From IMG/VR virus record IMGVR_UViG_3300034073_003340, positions 248,001-312,000 of that record: DNA of 64,000 nt. The stretch is one strand, 5' to 3'. Each line of letters opens with the position of its first letter. Position 1 is the stretch's first letter. Positions 1-63,135 of the stretch are shown here, piece by piece. The notes beneath the pieces are model-generated. The model searched no databases. It saw only the letters and a list, made by a program, of their open reading frames with translations, and was not told the origin of the DNA. A program made the translations under genes and the position numbers.

Positions 1-787
1 TCCAAAGATCAATGGCTAGATTTTCTTCATTGCGAATCAAGTAAGGAAGATCACCTGTATCCAACTTGTCCCAAGACTTTAGATATTCACTTACCCTAGG
101 ATCCAAATGGTCATGATTACCCTCGCGAGCCAACTTGCTGGAAATATTACTGCGCGGCACACAAATGTGGTTAGAGGGCAGCGCCTTAGCGAACCCCTGG
201 TTGTCTGAGCCAAAAACGTATACGACTTTGATTCCATCCGATATGTGTTTTTGGATCGATTCAGTCAGCCTTGCTACCACATCAGTAAAATTGATTTCAG
301 CTGGCATATAGCGTGAGGCCCAAGGATCACAGGATAACCAGCTGCTATCCTGCGTGGCGAGTTCTACCATAGCACAACGGTGAACCGCAGGGATGGCCGC
401 GGTTCCGTTATACTTTTGGCCCACATAACTATCATGACCTGGTGAGAAGAACCCTGCGATTACCTGTGATTTGCCATCCTGTTCTATGAGCTCACGGGCT
501 GCTTCCATCATGGCAATATGACCGTTATGGATTGGTGCCATGCCACCAGTGGTCACTAGGACCACTCGTCTCTTTCCGCTACTGGTTTTGTAATTTTCGA
601 TCAGCTTGTGGAAAGAAGTGGTCAAAAACATTGGATCATAGGCTTTATGATCCTTGGCTAACTTTTCCAGGCCGTCATCAAAAAAGCCAGCATCATAGAG
701 AACTTGAGTGTTCTGATATTGGCTGTAGAGATAGTGATAACAAGGGTCACTTAGCGCCTTCCAAGCATATCGCTGGTCAGGGGTCAT
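1..787 (-). CDS. Nicotinamide/nicotinate mononucleotide adenylyltransferase (NMNAT/NadD-like), runs off the window start
   Basis: Not in the ORF track; manual translation from ATG 787 (GGAG RBS upstream) gives VVLVTTGGMAPIHNGHIAMME (GxxxPxHxGH), GFFSPGHDSY, VYVFGSD and ISS motifs; frame open to base 1. Confidence 0.85.
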   Translation of the reverse strand, partial: MTPDQRYAWKALSDPCYHYLYSQYQNTQVLYDAGFFDDGLEKLAKDHKAYDPMFLTTSFHKLIENYKTSSGKRRVVLVTTGGMAPIHNGHIAMMEAARELIEQDGKSQVIAGFFSPGHDSYVGQKYNGTAAIPAVHRCAMVELATQDSSWLSCDPWASRYMPAEINFTDVVARLTESIQKHISDGIKVVYVFGSDNQGFAKALPSNHICVPRSNISSKLAREGNHDHLDPRVSEYLKSWDKLDTGDLPYLIRNEENLAIDLW

Positions 788-961
788 CGCTCCTTTTTCT
801 TGAAGCGTATAACCATACTCAGCAGCTTCTGAGGGTAGAATGGCCGGATCGACCCCGAGAATCTCATATAGATTCTCAAGAGGTCGATACATTGTTATAC
901 CACAGGCGTAAGTATCTGTCATGTAGCCTATCTGCTACCAAACTGGTGACCTGTCAACCAC

Positions 962-1360
962 TCAGTAGCCAAAAAGACCAGCCCCACCCAGACAGTCGAT
1001 TTCTTCCTTGATCGGCTTTTGGCCCACGGCTTCAAGAACTTTGTTTTGGTTGTAGATGAGCATAGCTTTTTCGCTGAGTTCCTGGGCCTTGATATCCAGG
1101 TCGTGAGCTTCTTTAGCGGTCAGCTTTCGATCAGCCAAAGCCTTGGCGAGATCCATCTTCAAAGCGTTACAGTCGCCCCTTGAATAGCCACTGTCGATTA
1201 TTTCGCTGGCTTGGTCATATTCATAGCGGCCCACTTCCTGATCAGGGCGAACCAACCAGTCTGGCAACATATGCCAAACGCCAGCGACCCCAGCACCCAC
1301 ACAAATCAGCATAATCGAGATGCCAAAAATATCTCGACCACCCTGAGAAATTTTAGCCAT
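962..1360 (-). CDS. Hypothetical membrane-anchored protein
   Basis: N-terminal hydrophobic segment; overlaps the stop of the upstream ORF. Confidence 0.6.
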   Translation of the reverse strand: MAKISQGGRDIFGISIMLICVGAGVAGVWHMLPDWLVRPDQEVGRYEYDQASEIIDSGYSRGDCNALKMDLAKALADRKLTAKEAHDLDIKAQELSEKAMLIYNQNKVLEAVGQKPIKEEIDCLGGAGLFGY

Positions 1361-1754
1361 TGATTATATCCCATTCACTTGCGATGTATGCGTAGTAGGA
1401 ATTTTCCTCGATACGCATGAAGTTGCTGGTCACGCTGGTCGAGCGTTCCACATAGGCGTTGCCCCGGATAGCCTGGCGCATGATGCTCTCACAGATGAAC
1501 TTGACCACTGCCTCTTCATCCTGAGGCTGGGCCGGGCTCAGCATAACCGCGTCGCGAGCAGATTCCCAAACGGAAATCGATACCAGGTAATGATTGGCGA
1601 CCTGTGCGCGGGCTGCGGTGCGCATTGCGCTCTCTGCCCACGAAAACGCATGAACGGCGTTGGTTTCCAGATCGTTCTTGAACTTCGCCAGTTCGACATC
1701 ATTGGCAGTAACCGCATTGGTGAAGAACCGCTTGATTTCTGCGAGGGTAATCAT
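1353..1754 (-). CDS. Hypothetical protein
   Basis: Start reassigned to ATG 1754 after AGGAGA RBS and early promoter. Confidence 0.65.
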   Translation of the reverse strand: MITLAEIKRFFTNAVTANDVELAKFKNDLETNAVHAFSWAESAMRTAARAQVANHYLVSISVWESARDAVMLSPAQPQDEEAVVKFICESIMRQAIRGNAYVERSTSVTSNFMRIEENSYYAYIASEWDIING

Positions 1755-1854
1755 TTCCGATCTCCTTTGTGACTTGCTATTCACCAGTTCTAACAGAAAC
1801 AGGGTAGATGTCAACCATATTCATGGAAAGAGCGGGGAAAACCCCCGCTCTTTT

Positions 1855-2253
1855 TTAGCCGATGGCAATCTGCCTTGGCTTTGCTTCTTCGGGCATTTCC
1901 CGAATTAGGTCAATTAGGAGCAAACCGTGCTCAAGCTTTGCTTCTTTGACATGGACATAATCACCTAGTTTCCATTCTCTAGCAAAGTCCCTGAACGCGA
2001 TTCCTCGATGGATGACCTCAACTGAATCTTCAACAGGTTCCTTTTTACCCTTGACGAGAAGGTAACCATTATTCTCAACAATTGAAATATCATCCTGGGA
2101 ATAACCAGCAACCGCAATAGTCACGCGGAAGTGATCCTCGGAGATTTTCTCAATGTTGTAATGGGGAAAGGTTGGTTGAGTATGGTCGAAGAAACGGTCC
2201 AGGCTGTCTAGACCAATGCCATAACGAAACAGACGATTAACTGTAGAATCCAT
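1855..2253 (-). CDS. ibpA: Small heat shock protein Hsp20/IbpA family
   Basis: FPHYNIEK, IAVAGYS, IHRGIAFRDFAREWKL, AKLEHGLLLIDL, PEEAKPRQIAI. Confidence 0.95.
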   Translation of the reverse strand: MDSTVNRLFRYGIGLDSLDRFFDHTQPTFPHYNIEKISEDHFRVTIAVAGYSQDDISIVENNGYLLVKGKKEPVEDSVEVIHRGIAFRDFAREWKLGDYVHVKEAKLEHGLLLIDLIREMPEEAKPRQIAIG

Positions 2254-2308
2254 AAATCCTCCTTAAAAAGCGAGAAACGTGATCGGCCCAAAGGCACCGA
2301 TCACGTTT
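2251..2308 (-). promoter_or_regulatory. ROSE-like RNA thermometer in the Hsp20 5' UTR
   Basis: Stable hairpin followed by UUCUC-G-CUU-UUU-AAGGAGGA: UCGCU motif pairing with the SD, with a bulged G. Confidence 0.75.
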
Positions 2309-3075
2309 TATTTATTTTGGAGGAATCTGGAAATCAATATTTTAGATGAGGACAATTACTCGTTCATGTGGTCGATTGCCACGTAGTTGGGATTGCTCAG
2401 CATGGCCACACACTGGTAGGACTTGTTACCATCAGCGCGACATTCCTGGTAGAGCATGTAGTTCCAGATCGCACCGGCGACCATGAGAAGCGGAACGAGA
2501 ATGAACATTCCGCCGACGACGATTCTGGGGAAGCGAGACATTTTGGAATCCTTTCTTACTTTATTCGCTTATGATCAAACCACCGCTCTGCGTGAGGGTT
2601 GCTTCCCCAACCAGGGTGGTACGGGCATATTCGATCTCCTGATATTGCCTACGACTCTGGTATAGCGTATTCTACACTAGAGTCAACCACACTCAATCCT
2701 CTTTGGGAAGAAAGCTCACAAACTCACGAGCAGCCCAGATCTCACCCTGTTCCTCACCACGTGAGTAGGCGTCGTCGATATTGCCTCCGCAATATTCGTG
2801 GACCTCGAAATCCGGGTCATCTCCGTCGGCTTCCTGTGCTGCTAGCTTCTTCATGCGAGCAACGTATTCATCTGGGATTTCAATCAACATGATGATTTCA
2901 CTCCTTATGCGTCAATCCAAACTATCCATCCTGGATCGTGACTGATTCGGCATCGCCGGATTGACAACTGTCATTCCAGTTTATGGTAACCGCCTCATCC
3001 AGCTTGTCCTCCGGGATACCGTTGAGGGTATCCCGGAGTTGGCGCACGGTGAGCATTTGCCGGCTGTTTTCCATA

Positions 3076-3405
3076 TCAGTGGCGGGTGTTCAGCTGGCCG
3101 CGCGACATTGCGCTGAAATACTGGCTGGGCATATCGGCCGCGAGACGCGGTGCCAGTATTGCCTGGTAGTTATTGCCCATGACCTCATAGCCCTTGTTGA
3201 GCTTGGCGCGGAGCAGGTCGCGGGGCATGCCGTTGATTTCGGTCTTGAACTTCAGCTTGCCATTGCGGCGACCCCAAAAGCGGACCATCGTGGTGCCGAT
3301 CTTGGCTAGACCCCACACCTTGTCGTTCTGTGCCGCACCGCCGCGGAGACCGCGGTCACCTTCATTGTGGAAGTGGGCCGCCACGAGAATTTCAACCTGT
3401 GCCAT
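3076..3405 (-). CDS. WGR domain protein
   Basis: DKVWG...RFWGRRNG...KLNKGY; AGGAGA RBS and early promoter. Confidence 0.75.
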   Translation of the reverse strand: MAQVEILVAAHFHNEGDRGLRGGAAQNDKVWGLAKIGTTMVRFWGRRNGKLKFKTEINGMPRDLLRAKLNKGYEVMGNNYQAILAPRLAADMPSQYFSAMSRGQLNTRH

Positions 3406-3439
3406 ATTCGATCTCCTGTTTGTGTTTCCGATAAACAAG

Positions 3440-3474
3440 TTCTAGCAGAAACTGGTGAAGTGTCAACCAGTTTC
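3440..3474 (-). promoter_or_regulatory. Type copy of the repeated early promoter (CTGG)TTGAC-N17-TAnnnn
   Basis: CTGGTTGACACTTCACCAGTTTCTGCTAGAAC; related copies near 1790, 3880, 4300, 5190, 7035, 7920, 11150, 11880, 13835, 14340, 18315, 28070, 28670, 35620, 43285, 43930, 48195, 50700, 55250. Confidence 0.85.
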
Positions 3475-3527
3475 TCACCGGGATATTAAAAAGGAATGGT
3501 TTTCGAGGTTGCCCTTACTACTGGTGC

Positions 3528-3842
3528 TTAAGAGCACCAGTAGCTTTCGCTGGCCACGCTACAGGCGTAGGGGGTGTCGATGGGCTCTTCGACCAGCTTG
3601 CCGGTCATCATGTTGACCACCAGCTTGTGACCATCGCGCGGGGTGGGGATCTTCAGCGCCGACTTGATAAACTGGTGAGCAGCCTTTGCCGTGCGGAAAG
3701 TGTTGACGAAATCGCGAGGGGCCTTGGGAACATAATAGCCGTCAGCGAGGGCGATCGAAACCTGCTCGTTGTCCGAGGTGAGGTTGAGCCACTTTACCCG
3801 CTTGTCCAGAGCCAGCTTTGCGAGGACCTTACCGTTCTTCAT
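3528..3842 (-). CDS. Hypothetical protein
   Basis: Early promoter and AGGAGA RBS; GC3-rich codons. Confidence 0.7.
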   Translation of the reverse strand: MKNGKVLAKLALDKRVKWLNLTSDNEQVSIALADGYYVPKAPRDFVNTFRTAKAAHQFIKSALKIPTPRDGHKLVVNMMTGKLVEEPIDTPYACSVASESYWCS

Positions 3843-3931
3843 GTTCGATCTCCTGTTTGCGTTTCCTATGTCACAGTTCTACACTCTGGTGAACAGGAGT
3901 CAACCAGAATCTCACCAGTTTTCAAATTAGA

Positions 3932-4267
3932 TTAGGGCAAGAGACTCCCGAGATCAAAATTGGGATCATCAATCAGGCCGTCCGCACACGTCGGTGATTC
4001 CAGATAGAAGTCGGCATCGAAATCACCAGTGTCATCCAACTGGAATAGTTTGAAACCATGGGCTTCGGAAACCAATAGCGGATCATCTTCCTTGCGCTGG
4101 GTATCCAGGCAGTTGATATCATAGTCCTTGGCCTCAACACTTTTTTCCCAGCGGAGATAAGCTGCGACGCTGGTAAAGGTCTTGGTCCGGTCAATCATGC
4201 GACCAGGGGTGGTATAATGAGCGGTGATCTCGGTGATTGTTTCCGGATTGTCGAACTGCGTTGCCAT
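3932..4267 (-). CDS. Hypothetical protein
   Basis: Early promoter and AGGAGA RBS before ATG 4267. Confidence 0.65.
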   Translation of the reverse strand: MATQFDNPETITEITAHYTTPGRMIDRTKTFTSVAAYLRWEKSVEAKDYDINCLDTQRKEDDPLLVSEAHGFKLFQLDDTGDFDADFYLESPTCADGLIDDPNFDLGSLLP

Positions 4268-4320
4268 TGTCGATCTCCTTTGTCTGCCTATAACCCACAG
4301 TAGCAGAACTGGTGAGAACG

Positions 4321-4740
4321 TCAACCAGTTTTTGTCAAAAGATTGAAAATTTCATCCCAATCAGTCTCTGGATCAAAACCGGCCTTGTCATCGAGCAGAA
4401 TGCTAAAGTAGAACTTTCGCTCAAAGTTACCCGAAGGCGTGTTGGCAATCTCAGGGTTCTCGTTGAAGTAGTCAACCTTGATCCCATGTTGAGCGAGAAA
4501 GCTGATGATCGCCGGATATTCCTCTGGGTGGCACGATGACCAGATGATCAAACGATAGTCAGGAACACCTGAGATAAGCTTGAGGGTCTCAACGGCTTTT
4601 GGAGTGGTAAAGGCATATGCGCCTTGTTCATAGTTGGATCGGAACACCACTCCATGAAGGTCAACCGCCCAATAGATAAGCGGTTCATTCCGCTCAATCG
4701 AAACTTTCAAGGCTCGATTGATTGCTTTGATGATGCTCAT
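4321..4740 (-). CDS. HAD-superfamily phosphatase-like protein
   Basis: WAVDLHGVV (motif I variant), LIIWSS, FNENP, ILLDDKAGF (motif IV). Confidence 0.7.
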   Translation of the reverse strand: MSIIKAINRALKVSIERNEPLIYWAVDLHGVVFRSNYEQGAYAFTTPKAVETLKLISGVPDYRLIIWSSCHPEEYPAIISFLAQHGIKVDYFNENPEIANTPSGNFERKFYFSILLDDKAGFDPETDWDEIFNLLTKTG

Positions 4741-4789
4741 GAGATCCTCTTGAATGGTAGCAGGGGGCCTGGCCCCCTGCCGTTAGCAA

Positions 4790-5152
4790 TCACTTGCGGA
4801 AGAGAGCATCCAGCCGGTCACTGGCTTCGATGAGATCCAGGATACCCTTCTTGGTCATGTAGCCCACCGTCCGCGACTGCCAGGCATCACCATAGGGCAG
4901 ATGGACGAGGAAAAACTTGACCTTGGCGTTGCTGCCGCGCGGGGCTTCTGCCACCATGTATTGCGCATAACCATCGGCAACACCCTCGCGATAGATGCGT
5001 CCCGTATTCTTGCCAGTATATCCGAGATCGGTGAGATACTTCTTGACCGCTTCCTGGTGGGCTTCTTCGGCGGCAATCGCCTTGGCATGGTCGTAGTTCA
5101 TGTAATCGACCTCAGGTGCCGGGACTTCTGCGGGCAGGGAATAGACCTTCAT
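4790..5152 (-). CDS. Hypothetical protein
   Basis: Early promoter, AGGAGA RBS, downstream GC hairpin. Confidence 0.7.
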   Translation of the reverse strand: MKVYSLPAEVPAPEVDYMNYDHAKAIAAEEAHQEAVKKYLTDLGYTGKNTGRIYREGVADGYAQYMVAEAPRGSNAKVKFFLVHLPYGDAWQSRTVGYMTKKGILDLIEASDRLDALFRK

Positions 5153-5602
5153 CTGTTATCTCCTATGTGTGTCTGCGATAAACCAATCTTAGCAGAATAG
5201 GAGAATTAGTCAACCAGATTTCACCAGGCAATTTCACCTGATTTCTTGGCCCGTTCATATTCGGCCCAGGGATCCTCAAACAAAGCGGCGGGACAGATGT
5301 GATCGTCACCATACTTACATTCATACCGCTCAGTTGGTATTTCATCCCCTATTACGTCATCATAGCTCAACCCATAGCAATGTCTCATGTGAGTCCAATA
5401 AAAGGGATCACTGGGCTTTAGACGTTGATCTCTCGTAACTTCTGCCTGTGCGACTCTGAGTTTGTTGGCAACATCATGTTTGATATCATTTAACTGTGAA
5501 ATGATATCAGTGAGGGCGTCGTGTCGATCAGCAAGTCCCTGGATGCTGTCTTCAATTTTGACGGCGCCAAGGGCTCGCAGGACCTTATGGAAGGTTGCTC
5601 GA

Positions 5603-6184
5603 TCAGTCAAGCCAGAATCCTAGCGCAGGAGCAGCCTTGGCATAGGCAGCTTGGAAGGTTTCTACCTCCATGATGGGATGGCGGAGGATCACCGTGTCCA
5701 CACATACTGGCTCACTCTCGAAGCCAACCAGACCGCCTATGAACGTGTTGACACCCTGTCCGTTCACAACCCACTTGCGCTGGGTAACGACCACGTAGTT
5801 ACCACGCTTGCGGACGATGTAGTAGGATTGGTCAGCGGAACGATCCCGCTCCACCCAATAGTATTCGCCTCGGCTCGCGAAGTCGCTGAGCAGCTTGCCG
5901 GAGTTGTTTCCCGCGACGTTGTCCATGAGGTATCGAAAAGCCGACTTGGGATCGCGCACTTTATCGAGGCGATTCCAGTAGCTAGTCTTTTGCTTATAGG
6001 ACTTCCTGTAGCCGCCACTGCTCATACCACTTGCGCGCAAGGACCGCTGCCATTTGCGTTCCTGGTGCTTGGCATATTGCTTGGGTGACATCTGCCAAAG
6101 CCGAGTGTTCTTTTTAGCCACGCGAAATCTCCTTGGGCTGAGTGAGGGAAAGGCTGTTGCGAACGAACTGCCGAAACTCGGCAT
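5603..6184 (-). CDS. Hypothetical basic protein
   Basis: Tiles with neighbouring minus-strand ORFs; start uncertain. Confidence 0.5.
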   Translation of the reverse strand: MPSFGSSFATAFPSLSPRRFRVAKKNTRLWQMSPKQYAKHQERKWQRSLRASGMSSGGYRKSYKQKTSYWNRLDKVRDPKSAFRYLMDNVAGNNSGKLLSDFASRGEYYWVERDRSADQSYYIVRKRGNYVVVTQRKWVVNGQGVNTFIGGLVGFESEPVCVDTVILRHPIMEVETFQAAYAKAAPALGFWLD

Positions 6185-6459
6185 CGCTCAGCTTGTCGTT
6201 GTCCACGTTGGCCCTCAGGGTGGCGCAGAGGCTTACGGCCATTTCGTCGGGGCTGGGCTTCACTGTGGTCGAACTCCAATATAGGCGTAATCGTCCGCGA
6301 TCATAACTGAATAGTCCGCGGTCGTCACGCCGTTGATGGTGAAGTGGACGTCAATGACACCATGGCGCGTGACTTCGTGAGCCTCGTATCCCTGGCTTGT
6401 CATGTTTCCGATGAATTGACGAGCCTCCGCAATTGGGGTGCGGATCTGAATCATCAGCT

Positions 6460-7002
6460 TCAACGCAGGCGCTCCTCGCAGAACGCCTTGTAGCGGCGCT
6501 CGAATTCATCCATGTCATCACGATGGATGCGGATACTATGATAGTCTCCGCTGTTGAGCGGGCGCGTTCCACCGTTGTGGCCTTTGCCGTTGTTGAACCG
6601 CAGTCCCTCACCCAGCGCGGGATAACCTTCGATCCGCCCCTCAATATAGCGCGAGCCATACTGACACTGCTGGCCGAGACGCGATCGGCAGAAATCACCA
6701 AAGAGGCTGTATCCACCGTCATTGAATTCAGGATGGATGATATCGCAATAGACTGCGGAGCCCAAAGCGCTCTCGTCGCACTTTTCGTCTTCGACGTTAG
6801 CAACCGGCGTGACAATGCCGGCTTCAACAAACATGGGAAGAAATTCCATCAGCAACCAACAGCGGTTGGGTTCTGCCTCGAGATGACGAGCACAGCAATA
6901 AGCGTCGACCTCCCAGTTGGATTCGAGGGAAAACATATTGCCGAATTCATTGAAGCAGACATCGACTTCCTGACAGTTATCGAGGGTATTCAGGATCTTC
7001 AT
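6460..7002 (-). CDS. Hypothetical protein
   Basis: Early promoter and AGGAGA RBS. Confidence 0.65.
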   Translation of the reverse strand: MKILNTLDNCQEVDVCFNEFGNMFSLESNWEVDAYCCARHLEAEPNRCWLLMEFLPMFVEAGIVTPVANVEDEKCDESALGSAVYCDIIHPEFNDGGYSLFGDFCRSRLGQQCQYGSRYIEGRIEGYPALGEGLRFNNGKGHNGGTRPLNSGDYHSIRIHRDDMDEFERRYKAFCEERLR

Positions 7003-7065
7003 GCTTCAATCTCCTTGCTGGCTATACAACCGTTCTAACAAATTCTGGTTAGGTGTCAACCAGAA

Positions 7066-7891
7066 TCAGTCAAACATGGATCCATCATAGGGCCGTCGCT
7101 TTGCGACCACTCTACCGTCGCGGATCAGCAGGAAGACCGGATGAATGGTCTCATTACTCATCCCCTTTGGCTCTTCGCCATAGAACGTCACGAAGTCCCC
7201 GTCCCGCGTTTCGCGGAACATACCCAGTCCCGCGCTGCCATCCATCTTGAGATAGCACTCGCTGAGCTTGTAAGGTAGCGAGTTGCCGACCTCGTCGATA
7301 AGGCACTTAGCGTTGTCGGTCTCGAACTCTCGACCCATAACTGTGAACTTCACGAAGCGATCTCCTGTTTGCGTTCGTATAGCCAGCCCATGATGAGCTC
7401 AATGTCGCGCTCCATGAAGCCTTCCATACCCAGGCTGCTCTTGAGATAGTCGAGAAAACGAACTTCGTCGTCGAAAATATCCGGGGCCTGCTTGAGCATC
7501 AGAATAATGCTATTGGCCTTCCAAGCCTTGAGAAAGCCAAAGCTAAAGGAGTTGGCATATTCCTGAAATTCCTTTGACAACTGGTTCATGCTACGATCTC
7601 CGGGGTTGGGCAAGGGTTAATCCAAATCCCCTTCGCCAGGTGAGTGACTCGATCCATGTCTCCCTGTAGATAACAGGCAATCAATCGGATCATTGCGTGA
7701 TAGTTGGAATGAGAATAGGCCGTGCGATTGAATTCGCTCCAGGCCTGACTACGGTCGCGAACGATTTGAACATTCCAGCGACCATCAGCGCCTTTGCTGA
7801 ATGTGCCGACCTGCTCGCCGTTGCGTTGAATCTCATAATGACGATAGGCGGGGATCGGAGAATCTTTGGTAACCTTGAGCTGGATTTTCAT
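7066..7891 (-). other. Operon of three overlapping short hypothetical CDS (7586-7891, ~7350-7589, 7066-7353)
   Basis: ATGA/GTGA overlaps after the early promoter at ~7920-7950. Confidence 0.6.
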
Positions 7892-7943
7892 TTCCGATCT
7901 CCTTATTGCCTATTCTCTGGGTATAACACCAGAGTTGACAAAG

Positions 7944-8357
7944 TCAACCAGAAATATCTTTCTTGTTGTGGGCCTTTAGCCAGTTTTGTCGCTGCCGGAA
8001 ATCCATGGACCCAAGGCGATGTTCAGGCACATCTACGAATTTCCGCCGATCCAAACTCTTGAGAATAATGTATTTGTTACCATCCCACCGCCCAAGCGAC
8101 CATTTACTGTTATTAGAAACTTTACAGTCTGTTGGGCAATGAATTTTACCTTGGCTACGAAAATTCCAATGGTCGCTTATTCTCAAGCAACCAAGCGGAG
8201 TATGATTCCAATCTTTTTCACCTGGAGCGACACTGTAATAGGAATGTCCATATGGAGATTTGCTCCCAACCTCCCAAGACATGATTTCCAGAATCAACTC
8301 CTCTGGCATATGCCAAGGAATATTATTTTCGTGAATAATTTGCTTGGGGTTGATCAA
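7944..8357 (-). CDS. Hypothetical phage protein (LRISDHW motif)
   Basis: TTG start after AGGAGA; early-type promoter. Confidence 0.6.
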   Translation of the reverse strand: MINPKQIIHENNIPWHMPEELILEIMSWEVGSKSPYGHSYYSVAPGEKDWNHTPLGCLRISDHWNFRSQGKIHCPTDCKVSNNSKWSLGRWDGNKYIILKSLDRRKFVDVPEHRLGSMDFRQRQNWLKAHNKKDISG

Positions 8358-8413
8358 AGTGTTCTCCTGTTATTGAAATTTCTAACAAAAATTGGCTAGA
8401 AATCAACCAGAAA

Positions 8414-8779
8414 TCACTCTTCCGCGGCATCACCCCAATAGGTGTCTTCTATGGAAGATTTGGAATCCTTACAGTAGAGCCGTCGCTTCTTGAGGTAGGC
8501 ATGCTCCCACGTCTCGAGGTCCATATTGACTTCCTCAAAGTCACCAAAGGAGTCTTTTATAGTCGTGCTCTTGAGAAAGATGTGCCAAGGCTCTTCACGA
8601 ACCTCAACTACCTTCCAGTCCACATTGGGACCACCCAGGCTTGCTTCGCGCCAGATCTGACCAACCGCAGGCTCAACTTCCTCGGCACGATGCCATTCCC
8701 AGAGGCGGACAGGCACCCGCCAGAACTGCCACACGATACCAACCGCTGTGGCAACAGTTCCGACCGTCATCAATGGCAT
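8414..8779 (-). CDS. Hypothetical membrane-anchored protein
   Basis: TAATG coupling to upstream 8779-8979 ORF. Confidence 0.55.
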   Translation of the reverse strand: MPLMTVGTVATAVGIVWQFWRVPVRLWEWHRAEEVEPAVGQIWREASLGGPNVDWKVVEVREEPWHIFLKSTTIKDSFGDFEEVNMDLETWEHAYLKKRRLYCKDSKSSIEDTYWGDAAEE

Positions 8780-8965
8780 TAGTCAAGCATATCCAAAAAT
8801 TCACCACAGGTCCAAATGCCCAGGGCGACAAGAAAACCAACGAGCGCAGGAAGCCAATACCAAAAAGTGGCAGTTGATATCGTTACACTGCTCAAGCCGA
8901 TCACCAATAGGCTCACAGTCAAGCCCAAAGCAATACAGATCAAACCTGAGATGAATTCACCCATA

Positions 8966-9721
8966 TCAAACTCTTTCAAACATAATATCGGTTCTGATGA
9001 TCAGCTTGCCAGGCTGACGGGGACCGATTGGTTCCCCATCATGTAACAACCGATGATCAAAAATCAAGGCAGAACCGGCCTTGGGATAATTGGCGAGAAT
9101 AACTTCGTCATCGTTACCTGAACGGTCCCAGTCACTGAAGTCCATTTCATCCATACGCTTACCAACTTGTGGATCCCTTAGAAATCGAGTTGCTCCTCCC
9201 TGTGGGTTGTTGGTAATATAGATGACCATGCTCATAAGAGACCGTTGTTTGTCATCCTTGATATAAGCGGCATCATAATGACCAACTAGCTGGCCACCGT
9301 GATCATATCGAATAAACCTCATCAAAGGGTTGACACCGATTGGCTTCCAAAGAGGATGGTTGTCGTGGTCAGTTGGGGTGAAGGGATTACATTCCCTTAT
9401 CGTATCCATTGAGGGCTGTAGACACCGCCACAGGGCATCTGCGAACCCTTCGTTATAGTTGCTCAATCGATAGTTGCCAACTTGGTCAAACGCCTTATCC
9501 GCAATACCGTCGAGACCAACTGCCTTCCAAGCCATATTTTTCAGGTTGCGGTAGAATACTTCCCTGATATGCCAGGGGATCAAGTTGTTGACCTTTCCAA
9601 CGAAATGACCTTGATCGTTAAGATGCTCAACAGAAAAGTCTGAAATGGGCATATCCCAATCACCAGCTAGGATCGCGTTATCGGCCTCGCTGAATTCAAA
9701 GGCGTTGACGAAGCCGTTCAC
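8966..9721 (-). CDS. 2OG-Fe(II) oxygenase (prolyl-4-hydroxylase-like)
   Basis: MRFIRY, GHYDA (HxD), GGATRF, LIFDHRLLHDG, IRTD. Confidence 0.85.
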   Translation of the reverse strand: MNGFVNAFEFSEADNAILAGDWDMPISDFSVEHLNDQGHFVGKVNNLIPWHIREVFYRNLKNMAWKAVGLDGIADKAFDQVGNYRLSNYNEGFADALWRCLQPSMDTIRECNPFTPTDHDNHPLWKPIGVNPLMRFIRYDHGGQLVGHYDAAYIKDDKQRSLMSMVIYITNNPQGGATRFLRDPQVGKRMDEMDFSDWDRSGNDDEVILANYPKAGSALIFDHRLLHDGEPIGPRQPGKLIIRTDIMFERV

Positions 9722-9872
9722 TCGCTCAACCCCCCAATGGGACTAACCGATCCACAAAGGCGCAGCCACGCCCGATGACTCCGGACTTCCTCTTCTTGCT
9801 TGGCTTTGAGCCGCTCGGACTTATAGAGCTTGATTTCTTCAGTCCGCTTTTTAATGCCGTCTGCGTAGCTGC

Positions 9873-10907
9873 TCATTCCGGCCTCCATGCTGGATTGTTC
9901 CACCCATTCTTAACACCAGCTGGCATAATGTCAAGGTGAACTGCGGGGCTCCTGCCCAGATATTTGTGGGCATTATAGCGGTGCATCCGCTCCAGATTTT
10001 CCCAGTATTCGTTGAGCTGCGCAACTGCGCTGCCATCGCCAGTGTCGACCTCATGTTCATGAGCCAGCTGTTCCACCATGGTCCGGCAATCTGTAGACCA
10101 AAGCATATGGGTGAACAGTTCCACAAAATCATAGGGAGCACCAAAGACCACTTCGTCTGTAGTCGCATCAAACATATCACCCGTCGGTGCGCGCTCGAGA
10201 ATTTCAGCAGGGACACCGAGAAGACGACCGACTTCATAAACCTCGGACTTGAACAGGTCGCTAATCAGCTGAACGTCGACCATACCATCACTGGCTTTGC
10301 CAAAATATCCCAGGTAACCGCCTTCCGAGAGGTTGGTGGTGCCGATGACCAGTCCAGGCCGCCCTTGTGCGGAGAGAACGCTGGTCGCATAGTAGTAGGT
10401 GGGTGTCCTGGCATAGCTCACGGCCTGGCCTCGTGCCCAGGTGGGCTTGGGATCCGCAGTGCCGATATTTTCAGGCAAGCCAGGGTGACCCAATTCACGT
10501 TCAACGGAGTTGATGATTGACTCCACAATTGGTCCCACATCAATTCGCAGAGTCTCGACATCAAATGCCTCACATACCTGGTAGGCAAGACGAGTAGCGG
10601 TGTCTTGCCCAGTAACCCCTCGGCTCATAATAGCGGGGAGGGTGATAGCAACGATATGTTGGATTGGACTGTTGGGAAGCTGGCTGGCATACTTGACCAC
10701 GCCGAGGACCACTGCGCTGTCGATACCTCCCGATATTGCGATGACCGCGCTGGAAAGACCTGCCTGCTCATAGTAGGAATTCAGAAGGTCGGCCTTTGCC
10801 TGGAGAACCACCTGGGCATCAAATGCTCGTTCCTGTCGAGCATACCCAAGCGCCTCGACTAGCTTGGGATGCATCTGCATGTTGGTGGTGTGGTTGCGAA
10901 TTTCCAT
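9873..10907 (-). CDS. nadE: NH3-dependent NAD+ synthetase
   Basis: ISGGIDSAV PP-loop, IGTTNLSE, GYFGKASDG, DLFKSEVY, APTGDM. Confidence 0.93.
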   Translation of the reverse strand: MEIRNHTTNMQMHPKLVEALGYARQERAFDAQVVLQAKADLLNSYYEQAGLSSAVIAISGGIDSAVVLGVVKYASQLPNSPIQHIVAITLPAIMSRGVTGQDTATRLAYQVCEAFDVETLRIDVGPIVESIINSVERELGHPGLPENIGTADPKPTWARGQAVSYARTPTYYYATSVLSAQGRPGLVIGTTNLSEGGYLGYFGKASDGMVDVQLISDLFKSEVYEVGRLLGVPAEILERAPTGDMFDATTDEVVFGAPYDFVELFTHMLWSTDCRTMVEQLAHEHEVDTGDGSAVAQLNEYWENLERMHRYNAHKYLGRSPAVHLDIMPAGVKNGWNNPAWRPE

Positions 10908-10916
10908 GATGATCCC

Positions 10917-11120
10917 TTACAGAGCTGCGGTGCTGTGGGTAACCTGTTCGCCGTTCAGCTCGCAGAGAACAACCGATACGTCATAGGACTTGCGGGCCTT
11001 AAAATGGGCGGCCGCTGCCAACTGAGCCTTATAGCTCGAGGGAGCATAAAGGTCGATCGACTTGCCCTTGAAGAAGGCCTTATAGCCGTTGTCGCCGGGA
11101 GCCTGCTGATTGATTGCCAT
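10917..11120 (-). CDS. Small hypothetical phage protein
   Basis: Early promoter and AGGAGA RBS; first gene of the nadE unit. Confidence 0.7.
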   Translation of the reverse strand: MAINQQAPGDNGYKAFFKGKSIDLYAPSSYKAQLAAAAHFKARKSYDVSVVLCELNGEQVTHSTAAL

Positions 11121-11182
11121 AAAATCTCCTATTGTCTATAGGACTGGTTTAACACCAGTCCTATATTCGTCAACCAAATTTC

Positions 11183-11845
11183 TTACAGCGAAGCCAGCTG
11201 CTTGTTAGCCTCTTCGACCTTCCAAATGGCATGTTTCAGACCTGATTTCAGCCATTCCAAGTTCCTGTTTTCTCCAGTAAAATTGTCGACCTGCCACTGA
11301 AGGTTGTTGCGCTCCTTTGTTGCCTTGTTCAGCCGCTTGGTAAAATATTCCCGACGAGAGCGCTTGCTTTCAAAGGGAACACCCTCGGGCCAGTTCAGCT
11401 CTTTGCGATGACCCGAGCCGTTGCTCCAGCTGTTAATCGACATATAGAGGATGTCTTCATCTTCGTTGCCGTTGCTGAGCAGCACAAACAACTTGATCGG
11501 ATTGAACAGCGTGATGACCTTGGTGACCTTGTAATCACCCTTGCCGCATTCCTGTAGGCTTTCGATCATATTCTGGATAATATTCGTCTGCGTCTTGAGG
11601 CGACGCGAGTTCAAAAGGGTTGTGGAATCCAGTGTATCCGACACCGTGCCGATGCCCGAATAGTGACCGCGCTTTGCCTTGAGACTGATGCGTTCCAGCA
11701 GACCTTCGGGATAAGTCACATTGCTTTCCGAGGCACCATAGTGGTAACCACTATCCAGCCGAGGAAACTGACGAATGCTTTCCTCACGAAGATCTTCCAG
11801 TTCCAGGGTTCCGATGACCTCAGTGGAAAAAGTCAGTAGTGCCAT
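11183..11845 (-). CDS. Hypothetical protein
   Basis: Early promoter and AGGAGA RBS before ATG 11845. Confidence 0.65.
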   Translation of the reverse strand: MALLTFSTEVIGTLELEDLREESIRQFPRLDSGYHYGASESNVTYPEGLLERISLKAKRGHYSGIGTVSDTLDSTTLLNSRRLKTQTNIIQNMIESLQECGKGDYKVTKVITLFNPIKLFVLLSNGNEDEDILYMSINSWSNGSGHRKELNWPEGVPFESKRSRREYFTKRLNKATKERNNLQWQVDNFTGENRNLEWLKSGLKHAIWKVEEANKQLASL

Positions 11846-12360
11846 TTTCGATCTCCTTGCCGTCTGCCTATGTTCTGGTTTTAACAGAAACTGGTGAGGA
11901 GTCAACCAGAAAAGTTCAAAAGTCGGCAGATTTGCTGCTTTTTCTGGACCATGATAGATTCGGAACTAAGTCCAAAATATCGCATAGAGGCGGCTTTTCC
12001 GCCCAATGCTCTCTTGAGTGTTGTCATTGGTAGGCAACTAAGAAACCCCTTGCTCTCCTTACAATAAAGAGCAAGGACCTTTTGACCCCGAAGATCAACA
12101 ATCCACCAAGTTTTGGATTTGGATCTTCGTCCCACAAAGTGATTTTTGTGTCCGTTTGATATTTGTGCCCTAAGATTATGCCACTCCTCGGGATCAAGAG
12201 AATCGACACCATATCGCTCCATTAGGCGCTTACTGAAATGATTGAAGGCTCTTGATGATTTACAGGTCATAGGACATTTTAACAGAAATTCTGAACTCAT
12301 TCAAGCTTTTGAATACAACCAAAAGTGACACCAGAGTTCTCCTTCTGTTATAGTATACTG

Positions 12361-12921
12361 ATGAACCCTTGGGAATACCTACTTTTTGATCTAGAATGCG
12401 ATGGATTCAAACCCAAGCGGATATGGTGTATCTGCATGGTGGATTTGATATCGCGGGAAAAGGCTAGCTTTTACGGACCAGAAGGAATAGCTGAAGCTAT
12501 TTTCAGGATACAATCAGCAAAGATGGTAGCCGGTCATAACATCAAGACCTTTGATATTAGGGTTATTGAAAAGATCACCGAAGGGGCAGTTCAGATTGAC
12601 CGCGCCAAGGTTCTCGATACCCTGTATCTTAGTAAGGCTCTGACCACCATGGACAGCCACAAGCTAGAGGATTGGGGTGAGATACTTGGTGTGCCCAAAC
12701 TGGATACACCATTCTCATTCTACAGGTTTGACCCTCGAATGATCCCTTACTGTGAGCGCGATGTGGAACTCAACCTACAGGTGTTCTTGGCTCTTTGGTC
12801 CCTGATGGAAAGTCGTCATGGAGAAAAGATTCCGCCCAAGTGGCAGATGCTGAACGAATATCGTTCAGCTCTTCCTATTGTCGGTCAAGGCCCAAACCAC
12901 TTTGGATCCGTCCTTCTTTGA
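12361..12921 (+). CDS. Stand-alone 3'-5' exonuclease (DEDDy, PolA/T7-type exonuclease domain)
   Basis: FDLECDG (ExoI), AGHNIKTFDI (ExoII), YCERDV (ExoIII); likely leaderless start after TATAGT. Confidence 0.88.
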   Translation: MNPWEYLLFDLECDGFKPKRIWCICMVDLISREKASFYGPEGIAEAIFRIQSAKMVAGHNIKTFDIRVIEKITEGAVQIDRAKVLDTLYLSKALTTMDSHKLEDWGEILGVPKLDTPFSFYRFDPRMIPYCERDVELNLQVFLALWSLMESRHGEKIPPKWQMLNEYRSALPIVGQGPNHFGSVLL

Positions 12922-13262
12922 ACATCGGTTACGAATTTTCTGTGCCGTGGTTCATCAGTCCTCTTCATCCAGATATCCCTCTGGGAGAAACGGATCCTCA
13001 AAGTAGCTGGAACCGCTTTCAGTAAGAGTGATGCTTCCTACGATCGTCTGACCTTCCGGCTTGACCACTGCTTCTCGGCCAAAGTCCTGCATGAGCTCGT
13101 AGGAAACTTCAACATATTGGCGAGGATTCTTGAGAGCAGCCTCGCAGGCCTTTCGATAGGGATCATCCTCGGACAGGAGATCGAGATCCACTGTCACATT
13201 ACAGGGACGCTCATTGAAGTAGTCTTCGGTAACGGTCACGATACGCATAGTTTTTCCTCTTC

Positions 13263-62570: not shown

Positions 62571-62659
62571 TGGAGGAAGACTAGGGACTTGAACCCTACA
62601 CCCATAAGGGTGCCCACTGGTTTCGAATCAGGTCCGGGGCCCTCCCCGGTTAATCTTCC
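62571..62659 (-). tRNA. tRNA-Ser(CGA), extended D stem
   Basis: TT-CGA-AA loop; CCGGGG-AGGG-CCCCGG D arm; CCA encoded. Confidence 0.8.
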
Positions 62660-62668
62660 ATGGTATTT

Positions 62669-62816
62669 AGTTGAGGGCAAGTATCCGTATGGCATCTTTC
62701 CGTTGCGTTTGCCAATTCCGCCACTTCCCGTCACAGAGTCGGGAAGCCAGGACTCGAACCTGGAAGACTAAAAGTCCACAGTTTTCTTTGATAAGCCAAA
62801 CAATCGGCCCTCAACT
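62669..62816 (-). ncRNA. Circularly permuted tRNA mimic, YrlA/Y RNA-like (copy 2)
   Basis: AGTTGAGGGC/GCCCTCAACT stem; CCAGGTTCGAGTCCTGG, CTTCCCG-loop-CGGGAAG, Leu-like D arm TGGCGGAATTGGCAAACGC. Confidence 0.8.
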
Positions 62817-62819
62817 TTG

Positions 62820-62892
62820 CGACCTATAGGGGAATCGAACCCCTCAAATTCCGCTAGACAGGCGGTTCTCTTTCCCAGCTGAGTCATAGGCC
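62820..62892 (-). tRNA. tRNA-Asp(GUC), CCA not encoded
   Basis: CCGC-CTGTCTA-GCGG; GGCCTAT/ATAGGTC-G. Confidence 0.8.
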
Positions 62893-63135
62893 ATATGACA
62901 CATTTTATGATGTGTAGCTATCAACAATCTTAGCAATTGCTCGATGTCTTTGTCTATATTCTTTTGCCGAAGCATTGGCTTCAAAATCCGTTGAATGGTA
63001 GGTTCCCATAACCAAGGTCCTACAATCCTCGCTGATCATAAACCATCGGAAGCGCCCACAAGGCTGAAGCAACACTTCGATCATTTTTCACCAATAATAT
63101 GAGTGGATTATGCTCATATTTACCTGGTGTTAGTT

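What the first reader, a model, noticed from the sequence alone, without database searches (positions are those of the whole stretch)
1..10907. NAD+ synthesis genes (NMNAT/NadD-like and NadE): possible deamidated NAD-restoration route
Seen: an adenylyltransferase missed by the ORF track (1-787, continuing beyond the NMNAT fold out of the window) and a NadE co-transcribed with a 2OG-Fe(II) oxygenase. Established: phage NARP1 (Adps/Namat) and NARP2 (Nampt/Nmnat) rebuild NAD+ depleted by Thoeris/SIR2-type defences, and neither uses NadE. Inference: a Preiss-Handler-type variant (NaMN to NaAD to NAD+).
Basis: partly seen in the sequence, partly recalled or inferred. Interest (0 to 1): 0.62.

Follow-up and report, generated by a model that had tools for sequence, protein, structure and literature searches.

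The report
Phage NAD synthesis module, newly recognised
A 436-kb phage carries both a standard four-enzyme pathway that turns nicotinamide into NAD+ and a second gene set for NAD synthesis, apparently undescribed and shared with many bacteria, whose chemistry is only partly predictable.

Summary
Window 2-922 (-) is the first 307 residues of a 579-aa protein. It has an unassigned N-terminal domain, a eukaryote-type NMNAT domain, and, beyond the window edge, a divergent type I phosphoribosyltransferase (PRT) domain. Window 9873-10907 (-) is an NH3-type NadE ("NadE2"). Window 8966-9721 (-) is a prolyl-hydroxylase-like 2OG-Fe(II) oxygenase.

The same 435,856-bp phage has a cluster about 214 kb away: NadE1, PncB, Nudix, a NadM-type NMNAT and a PncA-like nicotinamidase. 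It has no PRPP synthetase, Nampt or PnuC. A deamidated Nam->NA->NaMN->NaAD->NAD route is therefore encoded.

The window genes are not part of that cluster. They form a separate conserved module. NadE2, the oxygenase and the NMNAT-PRT protein are adjacent in 25 of 27 bacterial species loci and in a Burkholderia cenocepacia isolate. NadE2 is often fused to the oxygenase. In at least 24 protein clusters NadE is fused with the NMNAT-PRT part, mostly with the oxygenase as well. The NAD regulator NrtR lies beside the module in five loci.

My best reading is a compact nicotinate-to-NAD unit with a non-canonical PRT. The oxygenase's reaction is unknown, and any counter-defence role is untested. Preiss-Handler clusters in jumbo phages are already published; I found no description of this module.

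The parts
2..571 (-). NMNAT (pyridine-mononucleotide adenylyltransferase) domain of the 579-aa fusion protein. These are residues about 118-307; the rest of the domain and the whole C-terminal type I PRT-like domain lie left of the window at G000:C1:247183-248000.
   Evidence: PF01467 at 36.4 bits against a cutoff of 21. Mammalian NMNAT1/3 at E 1e-12. Motifs GGMAPIHNGH and SSKLAR are present. Full ORF. The PRT domain model has pLDDT 94.2. Type I PRTs fill the structural hit list at Z 5-7.3. A profile of the domain hits APRT at E 3e-4.
572..922 (-). N-terminal domain of the fusion protein (residues 1-117), with the start codon ATG at 922. No family could be assigned. It carries the conserved motifs RYAWKAL.DP.Y and AGFFDDG. 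To my eye it resembles a J domain lacking HPD; this was not confirmed.
   Evidence: No Pfam hit at E<=1. It is conserved across 35 homologues.
8966..9721 (-). Prolyl-4-hydroxylase-like 2OG-Fe(II) oxygenase, 251 aa. It is a module component that is fused to NadE2 in many bacteria.
   Evidence: PF13640 at 32.9 bits against a cutoff of 27. Invariant H148, D150, H223, H227 and R243. Model pLDDT 94, with P4H structures at E 5e-8. Fused to NadE in L017 and L019 and in 20 of 30 long homologues.
9873..10907 (-). NadE2: an NH3-type NAD synthetase-family PP-loop enzyme, 344 aa, with no glutaminase domain.
   Evidence: PF02540 at E 4.9e-28. TIGR00552 at 97 bits against a cutoff of 63.65. SGGIDS is present. 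It is 38-48% identical to the NadE next to the fusion gene in bacteria, against 25-33% for the phage's other NadE.

Best explanation
The window holds three genes of a conserved NAD-biosynthesis module: NadE2, a prolyl-hydroxylase-like 2OG oxygenase, and a three-domain protein (unassigned N-terminal domain, NMNAT, type I PRT). The last gene is cut by the window edge.

Proposed working of the module:
- The PRT domain joins a pyridine carboxylate, most likely nicotinate, to PRPP to give NaMN. This step is inferred.
- The fused NMNAT domain adenylylates NaMN to NaAD. This follows from homology and intact motifs.
- NadE2 amidates NaAD to NAD+ using ATP and ammonia. This also follows from homology and intact motifs.
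- The oxygenase is physically coupled to NadE2, but its reaction is unknown. It is dispensable in some lineages.

The phage also has a canonical cluster 214 kb away (PncA-like, PncB, NadM-type NMNAT, NadE1, Nudix). It therefore encodes two parallel routes to NAD+ through deamidated intermediates, and this pairing is conserved in related megaphages.

The purpose is either to refill NAD+ for the phage's own NAD-consuming enzymes or to offset NAD-depleting defences. The data do not decide between these.
For: Domain identities rest.

Functional linkage:
- NadE2 lies immediately upstream of the fusion gene in 24 of 27 species loci from at least 8 bacterial lineages, and downstream of it in one more. 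The oxygenase sits between them in most.
- The same operon occurs in a B. cenocepacia isolate.
- NadE-oxygenase fusions are seen in L017 and L019.
- Of 30 long homologues, 24 carry NAD_synthase, 26 carry CTP_transf_like and 20 carry 2OG-FeII_Oxy_3.

Link to NAD metabolism:
- NrtR, the NAD regulator (PMC2330246), is adjacent in 5 loci.
- In L041 the module is embedded between NrtR and PncA-PncB. In L043 it lies beside NrtR and Nampt.

The PRT domain as the mononucleotide-forming step:
- In the Shapirobacteria genome G004 the module is the only NadE and the only CTP_transf_like gene found. No NAPRTase-family gene and no QAPRT were found there.
- G013 likewise lacks any type II pyridine PRT.
- The same PRT fold is fused to a HAD phosphatase in other proteins. 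This fits a nucleotide-forming enzyme.

The second route in the phage is shown. Both routes are conserved in related megaphages of 416 and 465 kb. The phage encodes an NAD-dependent DNA ligase.
Against: - No biochemistry exists for any component.
- All known nicotinate, nicotinamide and quinolinate PRTs are type II; a type I enzyme for a pyridine has no precedent.
- The PRPP loop is one residue shorter than the canonical loop, and Pfam PF00156 does not detect the domain.
- 14 of 20 module-bearing genomes also have a NAPRTase-family gene, adjacent to the module in two. The PRT domain is therefore not simply a PncB replacement.
- The genomes without PncB are metagenome-assembled genomes of unknown completeness.
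- Two complete routes in one phage, and in one Saccharibacteria operon, suggest that the module does something the canonical enzymes do not.
- The oxygenase has no role in a plain Preiss-Handler scheme.
- In the phage, the NadE2-oxygenase pair and the fusion gene are about 8 kb apart, and a strong terminator-like hairpin at 2308-2275 lies between them.
Confidence: 0.55

Rival explanations
1. The module is NAD-related, but the PRT-like domain does not make the mononucleotide. NaMN or NMN comes from PncB, Nampt or the host. The NMNAT domain and NadE2 do the last two steps. The PRT-like domain would be regulatory (sensing PRPP, ADP-ribose or a nucleotide, as in PyrR and PurR) or would act on a ribose-phosphate substrate as PRPP synthetase and Adps do.
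For: A NAPRTase-family gene is present in 14 of 20 module genomes and is adjacent to the module in L041 and L043. The phage has its own PncB. The structural hits include PyrR, PurR and PRPP synthetases at Z values similar to true PRTs. The PRPP loop is atypical.
Against: The genomes G004 and G013 have the module but no PncB, Nampt or QAPRT. The domain has about 16 invariant polar residues across phyla, more than a sensor domain would need. The profile hit to APRT covers both the catalytic flexible loop and the PRPP loop.
Confidence: 0.2
2. The module makes or processes a compound other than NAD+. This could be a hydroxylated or otherwise modified pyridine dinucleotide, or a dinucleotide built on another carboxylated base. 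The 2OG oxygenase, and in 8 loci an Asp/Glu-racemase-family enzyme, would supply or tailor the base. In phages the product could interfere with NAD-derived immune signalling.
For: The oxygenase is fused to NadE in many lineages, which implies an obligatory chemical coupling. An Asp_Glu_race gene is conserved in 8 loci. The module co-exists with complete canonical routes in the phage and in L041. Structural neighbours of the oxygenase include the nucleoside-phosphate oxygenases PolD and PasI.
Against: The oxygenase and the racemase are missing from several module loci, including G004, where the module is the only NadE and NMNAT found. NrtR linkage points to ordinary NAD homeostasis. The nearest folds are protein prolyl hydroxylases. 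The phage has no racemase homologue.
Confidence: 0.13
3. On biological role: the genes are ordinary auxiliary metabolic genes that raise NAD+ supply for phage replication, for example for the NAD-dependent ligase. They would serve as redundant back-ups, not as a dedicated answer to NADase defences.
For: The module looks like housekeeping NAD synthesis in CPR bacteria. The phage encodes an NAD-dependent DNA ligase. Reviews of jumbo phages note multiple NAD-synthesis enzymes as back-ups (PMC7824862; PMC11662467).
Against: NAD-salvage pairs tested so far (NARP1, NARP2, NARP3) do rescue phages from Thoeris, DSR and SIR2-HerA. PncA uses nicotinamide, which is the product of NADase cleavage. The two roles are not exclusive.
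Confidence: 0.45

Closest known systems
Preiss-Handler / salvage I pathway (PncA, PncB, NadD, NadE), including the pncB-nadD-nadE clusters reported in jumbo phages (PMC11662467)
   Same: The overall chemistry is predicted to be the same: a pyridine carboxylate is converted to NaMN, then NaAD, then NAD+ by a NadE-family amidation. The phage also carries a canonical copy of this pathway.
   Different: In the window module the PRT is a divergent type I fold fused to a eukaryote-type NMNAT, not a type II PncB. NadE2 is a separate subfamily, 25-33% identical to the canonical phage NadE1. A 2OG oxygenase is attached, and the five domains can form a single polypeptide.
NARP2 (Nampt + Nmnat, e.g. Vibrio phage KVP40 NadV/NatV)
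   Same: Both are phage-encoded pairs of a PRT and an adenylyltransferase that rebuild NAD+ from a free pyridine base and PRPP.
   Different: No Nampt was found in this genome. The only NAPRTase-family gene scores as PncB (NF003704, 432.8 bits against a cutoff of 379). The route needs NadE. The PRT domain is type I and is fused to the NMNAT.
NARP1 (Adps + Namat)
   Same: Adps is a PRPP-synthetase-like enzyme with a type I PRT fold, and the module's C-terminal domain shares that fold class.
   Different: No match to the PRPP-synthetase N-terminal domain exists in the genome. There is no Namat. Nothing indicates use of ADPR-PP.
Francisella NadE*/NadM route (NaMN -> NMN -> NAD)
   Same: The F. 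tularensis NadE (3fiu) is the second-best solved relative of NadE2. The phage's first cluster pairs a NadE with a NadM-type NMNAT and a Nudix.
   Different: Which NadE, if either, amidates the mononucleotide rather than the dinucleotide cannot be told from sequence.
NadM-Nudix and NadR bifunctional NMNATs
   Same: In each, an NMNAT domain is fused to the enzyme of a neighbouring step in NAD metabolism.
   Different: Here the partner domain is a type I PRT, plus an N-terminal domain. I found this architecture in none of the papers searched.

Membership tests
NMNAT/NadD (HIGH-motif nucleotidyltransferase) | (H/T)xGH motif and ISxxxxR motif | tested here: met
   GGMAPIHNGH at residue 126 and SSKLAR at residue 261. 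Both are invariant in 35 homologues.
NMNAT/NadD (HIGH-motif nucleotidyltransferase) | Score above curated family cutoffs | tested here: inconclusive
   Pfam PF01467 scores 36.4 against a cutoff of 21, which is met. The NCBIfam equivalog TIGR00482 scores 40 bits against a cutoff of 112.45, which is not met. The best solved relatives are mammalian NMNAT1/3 at E 1e-12.
NMNAT/NadD (HIGH-motif nucleotidyltransferase) | NaMN versus NMN substrate preference | not testable with these tools
   This needs an enzyme assay.
NH3-dependent NAD synthetase (NadE) | PP-loop SGGxDS and family score above cutoff | tested here: met
   SGGIDS at residue 59. PF02540 scores 98.3 against a cutoff of 21. TIGR00552 scores 97 against a cutoff of 63.65.
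NH3-dependent NAD synthetase (NadE) | Absence of the nitrilase-type glutaminase domain | tested here: met
   The only Pfam match is NAD_synthase over residues 35-290 of 344. By contrast, the Gln-type NadE in L041 carries CN_hydrolase.
Type I phosphoribosyltransferase | PRPP-binding loop (acidic pair followed by a TG.T-type turn) | tested here: inconclusive
   The loop VMVEDDCVTGGT is present with D430, D431 and G435 invariant and T437 nearly so. It is one residue shorter than the canonical loop. Pfam PF00156 gives no hit. A family profile hits APRT at E 3e-4.
Type I phosphoribosyltransferase | Fold | tested here: met
   The model has pLDDT 94.2. Type I PRT-fold proteins dominate the top hits at Z 5-7.3, which is a middling score.
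2OG-Fe(II) oxygenase (P4H-like) | HxD...H iron triad, basic residue for 2OG, and double-stranded beta-helix fold | tested here: met
   H148, D150, H223/H227 and R243 are invariant. PF13640 is above its cutoff. Prolyl hydroxylase structures match at E 5e-8.
Preiss-Handler pathway (whole genome) | PncA, PncB, NaMN adenylyltransferase and NadE all present | tested here: met
   PncB scores above two NCBIfam cutoffs. The PncA-like gene scores above the Pfam cutoff, with D/K/C and metal motifs visible, but below the NCBIfam equivalog cutoff. There are two NMNATs and two NadEs.
NARP1 | Adps (PRPP-synthetase-like) plus Namat | tested here: not met
   There is no PF13793 match in the genome. The sole NAPRTase-family gene is PncB-type.
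NARP2 | Nampt plus Nmnat | tested here: not met
   Only one NAPRTase-family gene was found, and it scores as nicotinate PRT with a NAPRTase_N domain, not NAMPT_N.
NARP3 | PnuC transporter plus NadR | tested here: not met
   There is no PF04973 match in the genome. The NadR kinase domain was not searched.

The most novel reading that the evidence does not exclude
The NadE2 / 2OG-oxygenase / NMNAT-PRT module is a previously unrecognised route to NAD+. Its C-terminal domain would be the first type I PRT acting on a pyridine base. Its oxygenase would be mechanistically coupled to NadE, for example by supplying ammonia, tailoring the substrate, or gating by O2 and 2OG. In megaphages it would serve as a fourth kind of NAD+ reconstitution pathway against NAD-depleting immunity.
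Probability: 0.3. Interest if true: 0.8.

Novelty: new variant of a known kind. Interest (0 to 1): 0.6.

Why it matters
NAD+ depletion is a major bacterial anti-phage strategy, and three phage NAD+ reconstitution pathways have been shown experimentally. This genome shows a fully deamidated route in a megaphage.

More usefully, it exposes a conserved multi-domain module. The C-terminal domain alone has 1,161 cluster representatives, found in CPR bacteria, Obscuribacterales, Armatimonadota, Myxococcota, Burkholderia and a megaphage clade. The papers I could search do not describe it.

If the PRT domain makes NaMN, this is a non-homologous replacement for PncB. It would explain how some minimal CPR genomes make NAD. 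The obligatory NadE-oxygenase fusion points to unknown enzymology.

The module occurs in a cultivable species, B. cenocepacia, so the question can be tested directly.

Tried and rejected
- A megablast search of window 1-11000 against GenBank phages found no match.
- Pfam, NCBIfam and PHROGs gave nothing for the C-terminal 279 aa or the N-terminal 120 aa of the fusion protein. My impression that the N-terminus resembles a J domain stays unconfirmed.
- Foldseek against the PDB gave only weak PRT hits for the C-terminal model, E >= 0.03. VIA-align and a sequence profile were needed to place it.
A narrower alignment worked.
Physical association therefore rests on the natural fusions only.
- No RNA sequencing run holds the window, so I did not use read laying.
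- Promoter and terminator scans were at chance level overall.
- PHROGs gave no function for ten intervening small genes.
- I looked for an Asp/Glu-racemase homologue in the phage and found none.
- I rejected NARP1, NARP2 and NARP3 membership.
- I rejected the idea that the window NadE is simply the partner of the distant PncB cluster. That cluster has its own NadE1.
- I considered a defence-island origin. Only the Burkholderia copy sits near a TraG-like gene, and no defence genes recur around the module.

Full report
**Setting**

The window is G000:C1:248001-312000 of a 435,856-bp virus record with direct terminal repeats, rated complete. The region 1-13000 is read almost entirely on the minus strand. 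The DNA occurs in subsurface, soil and wastewater metagenomes, and no RNA run holds it.

**The observation**

The ORF at window 2..922 (-) starts at the ATG at 922 and runs off the window. The full gene, fetched from the genome (L001:683-2422, -), encodes 579 aa.

- Residues about 118-285 are a nucleotidyltransferase: PF01467 at 36.4 bits, and mammalian NMNAT1/3 at E 1e-12. The motifs GGMAPIHNGH and SSKLAR are present.
- Residues 1-117 match no family.
- Residues about 290-579 also match no Pfam or NCBIfam model, but they contain the PRPP-loop-like stretch VMVEDDCVTGGT.
- A model of this part built on 35 homologues is confident, with pLDDT 94.2 and pTM 0.91.
- An exhaustive structural comparison puts type I PRT-fold proteins (OPRT, HGPRT, XGPRT, APRT, PRPP synthetase, PyrR, PurR) throughout the top hits, at Z 5-7.3.
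- A profile of the domain hits APRT chains at E 3e-4, across the flexible loop and the PRPP loop.

So this is a divergent type I PRT homologue with an added helical subdomain.

The oxygenase model (pLDDT 94) is closest to prolyl-4-hydroxylases at E 5e-8. The nucleoside-phosphate oxygenases PolD and PasI are also among the hits.

Family searches of the whole phage genome found a cluster at about 28.7-34.2 kb, all on one strand:

| Gene | Size | Evidence |
|---|---|---|
| NadE1 | 331 aa | PF02540, E 5e-41 |
| PncB | 437 aa | NF003704, 432.8 bits against a cutoff of 379; TIGR01514, 277 bits against a cutoff of 269.55 |
| Unknown | 113 aa | none |
| Nudix | 225 aa | PF00293 |
| NadM/archaeal-type NMNAT | 201 aa | NCBIfam NF002243, E 8e-14, below its cutoff |
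| Two unknowns | 112 and 169 aa | none |
| PncA-like isochorismatase | 210 aa | above the Pfam cutoff; nicotinamidase model at E 5e-14, below its cutoff; D/K/C and metal motifs visible |

No PRPP-synthetase N-domain was found. No PnuC was found. No second NAPRTase-family gene was found, and hence no Nampt or Namat.

The phage therefore encodes every step of Nam -> NA -> NaMN -> NaAD -> NAD+. However, that cluster has its own NMNAT and NadE, so the window genes need their own explanation.

**The window genes are a conserved module**

The fusion protein has 136 full-length relatives in the word search. Many lie on contigs of 250-470 kb, and others are in bacteria.

- In a Candidatus Obscuribacter genome the homologue abuts a 613-aa protein that is NadE fused to the 2OG oxygenase. 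A second bacterial contig shows the same arrangement.
- A scan of one genome per prokaryotic species returned 27 loci. They come from Armatimonadota, several CPR (Candidate Phyla Radiation) lineages, Obscuribacterales, Myxococcota, Gammaproteobacteria, Clostridia and Burkholderiales.
- In 24 of the 27, a NadE sits directly upstream of the fusion gene. In one more (L043) it lies just downstream. This NadE is 38-48% identical to the window's NadE2, against 25-33% to NadE1.
- Seventeen of the 27 have the oxygenase between or beside them. Eight have NadE2 but show no oxygenase. One of these, L026, is cut at the contig end.
- A Burkholderia cenocepacia isolate carries an overlapping four-gene operon: an Asp/Glu-racemase-family gene, NadE2, the oxygenase and the fusion gene (34% identity). 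It lies near a TraG-like gene.
- A profile search of 1.84 billion cluster representatives with the PRT domain found 1,161 hits at E <= 0.001. Many are 1,130-1,230 aa long. Of 30 long ones, 24 carry NAD_synthase, 26 carry CTP_transf_like and 20 carry 2OG-FeII_Oxy_3. Most of the domains, and in many cases all of them, therefore sit on one chain.

These fusions are the strongest evidence that the three window genes act together.

**The phage clade**

In phages the order NadE2, oxygenase, then the fusion gene is kept, but 9-12 kb of small genes intervene. The megaphage-like copies form one clade with support 96 in a quick, unrooted tree.

**Link to NAD metabolism**

Clustering of the neighbouring ORFs, followed by Pfam, showed NrtR next to the module in five loci. 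NrtR is the ADP-ribose-responsive regulator of NAD synthesis (PMC2330246).

- In Saccharibacteria locus L041 the gene order is Gln-type NadE, NrtR, racemase-like gene, NadE2-oxygenase, fusion gene, PncA, PncB, Nudix.
- In L043 the order is NrtR, Nampt, fusion gene (split into two ORFs), racemase-like gene, NadE2-oxygenase.

**What the PRT domain does**

Across 20 module-bearing genomes, 14 also have a NAPRTase-family gene.

- In the roughly 1-Mb Shapirobacteria genome G004 the module supplies the only NadE match and the only CTP_transf_like match. That genome has no NAPRTase-family gene and no QAPRT.
- G013 and G008 also lack any type II pyridine PRT.

In such genomes something must make the mononucleotide, and the fused PRT domain is the obvious candidate. 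Completeness of these metagenome-assembled genomes is unknown, so this is suggestive only.

The same extended PRT fold (TM 0.75-0.87) occurs alone and fused to a HAD phosphatase. This fits a nucleotide-forming catalytic domain whose product is then adenylylated or dephosphorylated.

**What remains unexplained**

- The oxygenase has no role in a plain Preiss-Handler scheme. Yet it is fused to NadE in many lineages and absent in others.
- An Asp/Glu-racemase-family gene accompanies the module in 8 loci, but the phage has none.
- Both the phage clade and L041 keep a canonical route beside the module. This argues that the two are not fully redundant.

These points keep alive the readings that the PRT domain is not a nicotinate PRT, or that the product is not plain NAD+.

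**Comparison with what is known**

- NARP1 and NARP2 do not involve NadE. NARP3 is PnuC plus NadR. None of the three fits this genome.
- Jumbo-phage Preiss-Handler clusters (pncB, nadD, nadE) have been reported from metagenomes (PMC11662467). Reviews note multiple NAD enzymes in jumbo phages but list only NadV, NadM and NadR.
- Seven full-text searches found no description of an NMNAT fused to a type I PRT, or of a NadE-oxygenase fusion. That is not proof of absence from the literature.

**Biological role in the phage**

The phage encodes an NAD-dependent DNA ligase. PncA consumes nicotinamide, which is the product of NADase defences. Both a general NAD supply and a counter-defence role are plausible. 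Nothing here discriminates between them.

**Verdict**

A deamidated route in a phage is not in itself new. The module exposed by the window is, as far as I could find, an undescribed variant of NAD salvage with open enzymology.

Noticed in passing
G000:C1:28740-35359 (locus L013:4740-11359): This is the canonical NAD cluster: NadE1, PncB, a 113-aa unknown, Nudix, NadM-type NMNAT, and the PncA-like gene. It is followed directly by a nucleoside 2-deoxyribosyltransferase-like gene (PF15891) and an RNA ligase (PF09414), so NAD supply and RNA repair genes are co-located.
   Followed up: partly
window 1855-2253 (-): An Hsp20/alpha-crystallin small heat-shock protein (PF00011 at E 4e-13, phrog_432 at E 8e-34) lies between the module genes. 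A strong terminator-like hairpin with a 13-bp stem sits just upstream at 2308-2275.
   Followed up: no
window 12325-12921 (+): A 198-aa ORF on the opposite strand matches the exonuclease region of phage DNA polymerases (phrog_17 at E 1.5e-21; phrog_403, exonuclease subunit). It could be a split polymerase or a stand-alone proofreading subunit.
   Followed up: no
window 3076-3438 (-) and 4321-4740 (-): The 120-aa protein is about 80% identical in related megaphages, far above its neighbours, and has no family. The 139-aa protein is 75% identical and hits phrog_1238, which is annotated as phosphoheptose isomerase.
   Followed up: no
G000:C1:116805-120095 (locus L003): GTP cyclohydrolase I (FolE), a QueE-like radical SAM enzyme and a 182-aa type I PRT lie side by side. 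This looks like a 7-deazaguanine pathway, probably for DNA modification.
   Followed up: no
G000:C1:134854-135495 (-): A NAD-dependent DNA ligase adenylation domain (PF01653, E 1e-28) sits in a 668-aa open frame. This is an NAD+ consumer encoded by the phage itself.
   Followed up: no
L047 (Burkholderia cenocepacia GCA_001541445.1, contig LNCR01000023.1): The whole module, with the Asp/Glu-racemase-like gene, forms an overlapping operon a few kb from a TraG-like P-loop gene. This suggests carriage on a conjugative element in a cultivable host.
   Followed up: partly
L043:5905-7784, and L044 and L045: In one 'Gammaproteobacteria' metagenome-assembled genome of 1.1 Mb the NMNAT and PRT halves are separate overlapping ORFs. 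In two Patescibacteria loci only the N-terminal and NMNAT part matched (residues about 12-322). The halves can therefore exist apart.
   Followed up: no
G000:C1:110158-110580 and 62613-63008: Two further cytidylyltransferase-like ORFs (187 and 205 aa open frames) lie elsewhere in the phage genome. Their substrates were not examined.
   Followed up: no
L041:752-2686: The Saccharibacteria operon holds a glutamine-dependent NadE (CN_hydrolase plus NAD_synthase) just upstream of NrtR and the NadE2-oxygenase gene. Two different NadE types thus sit in one NAD operon, mirroring the two NadEs of the phage.
   Followed up: no
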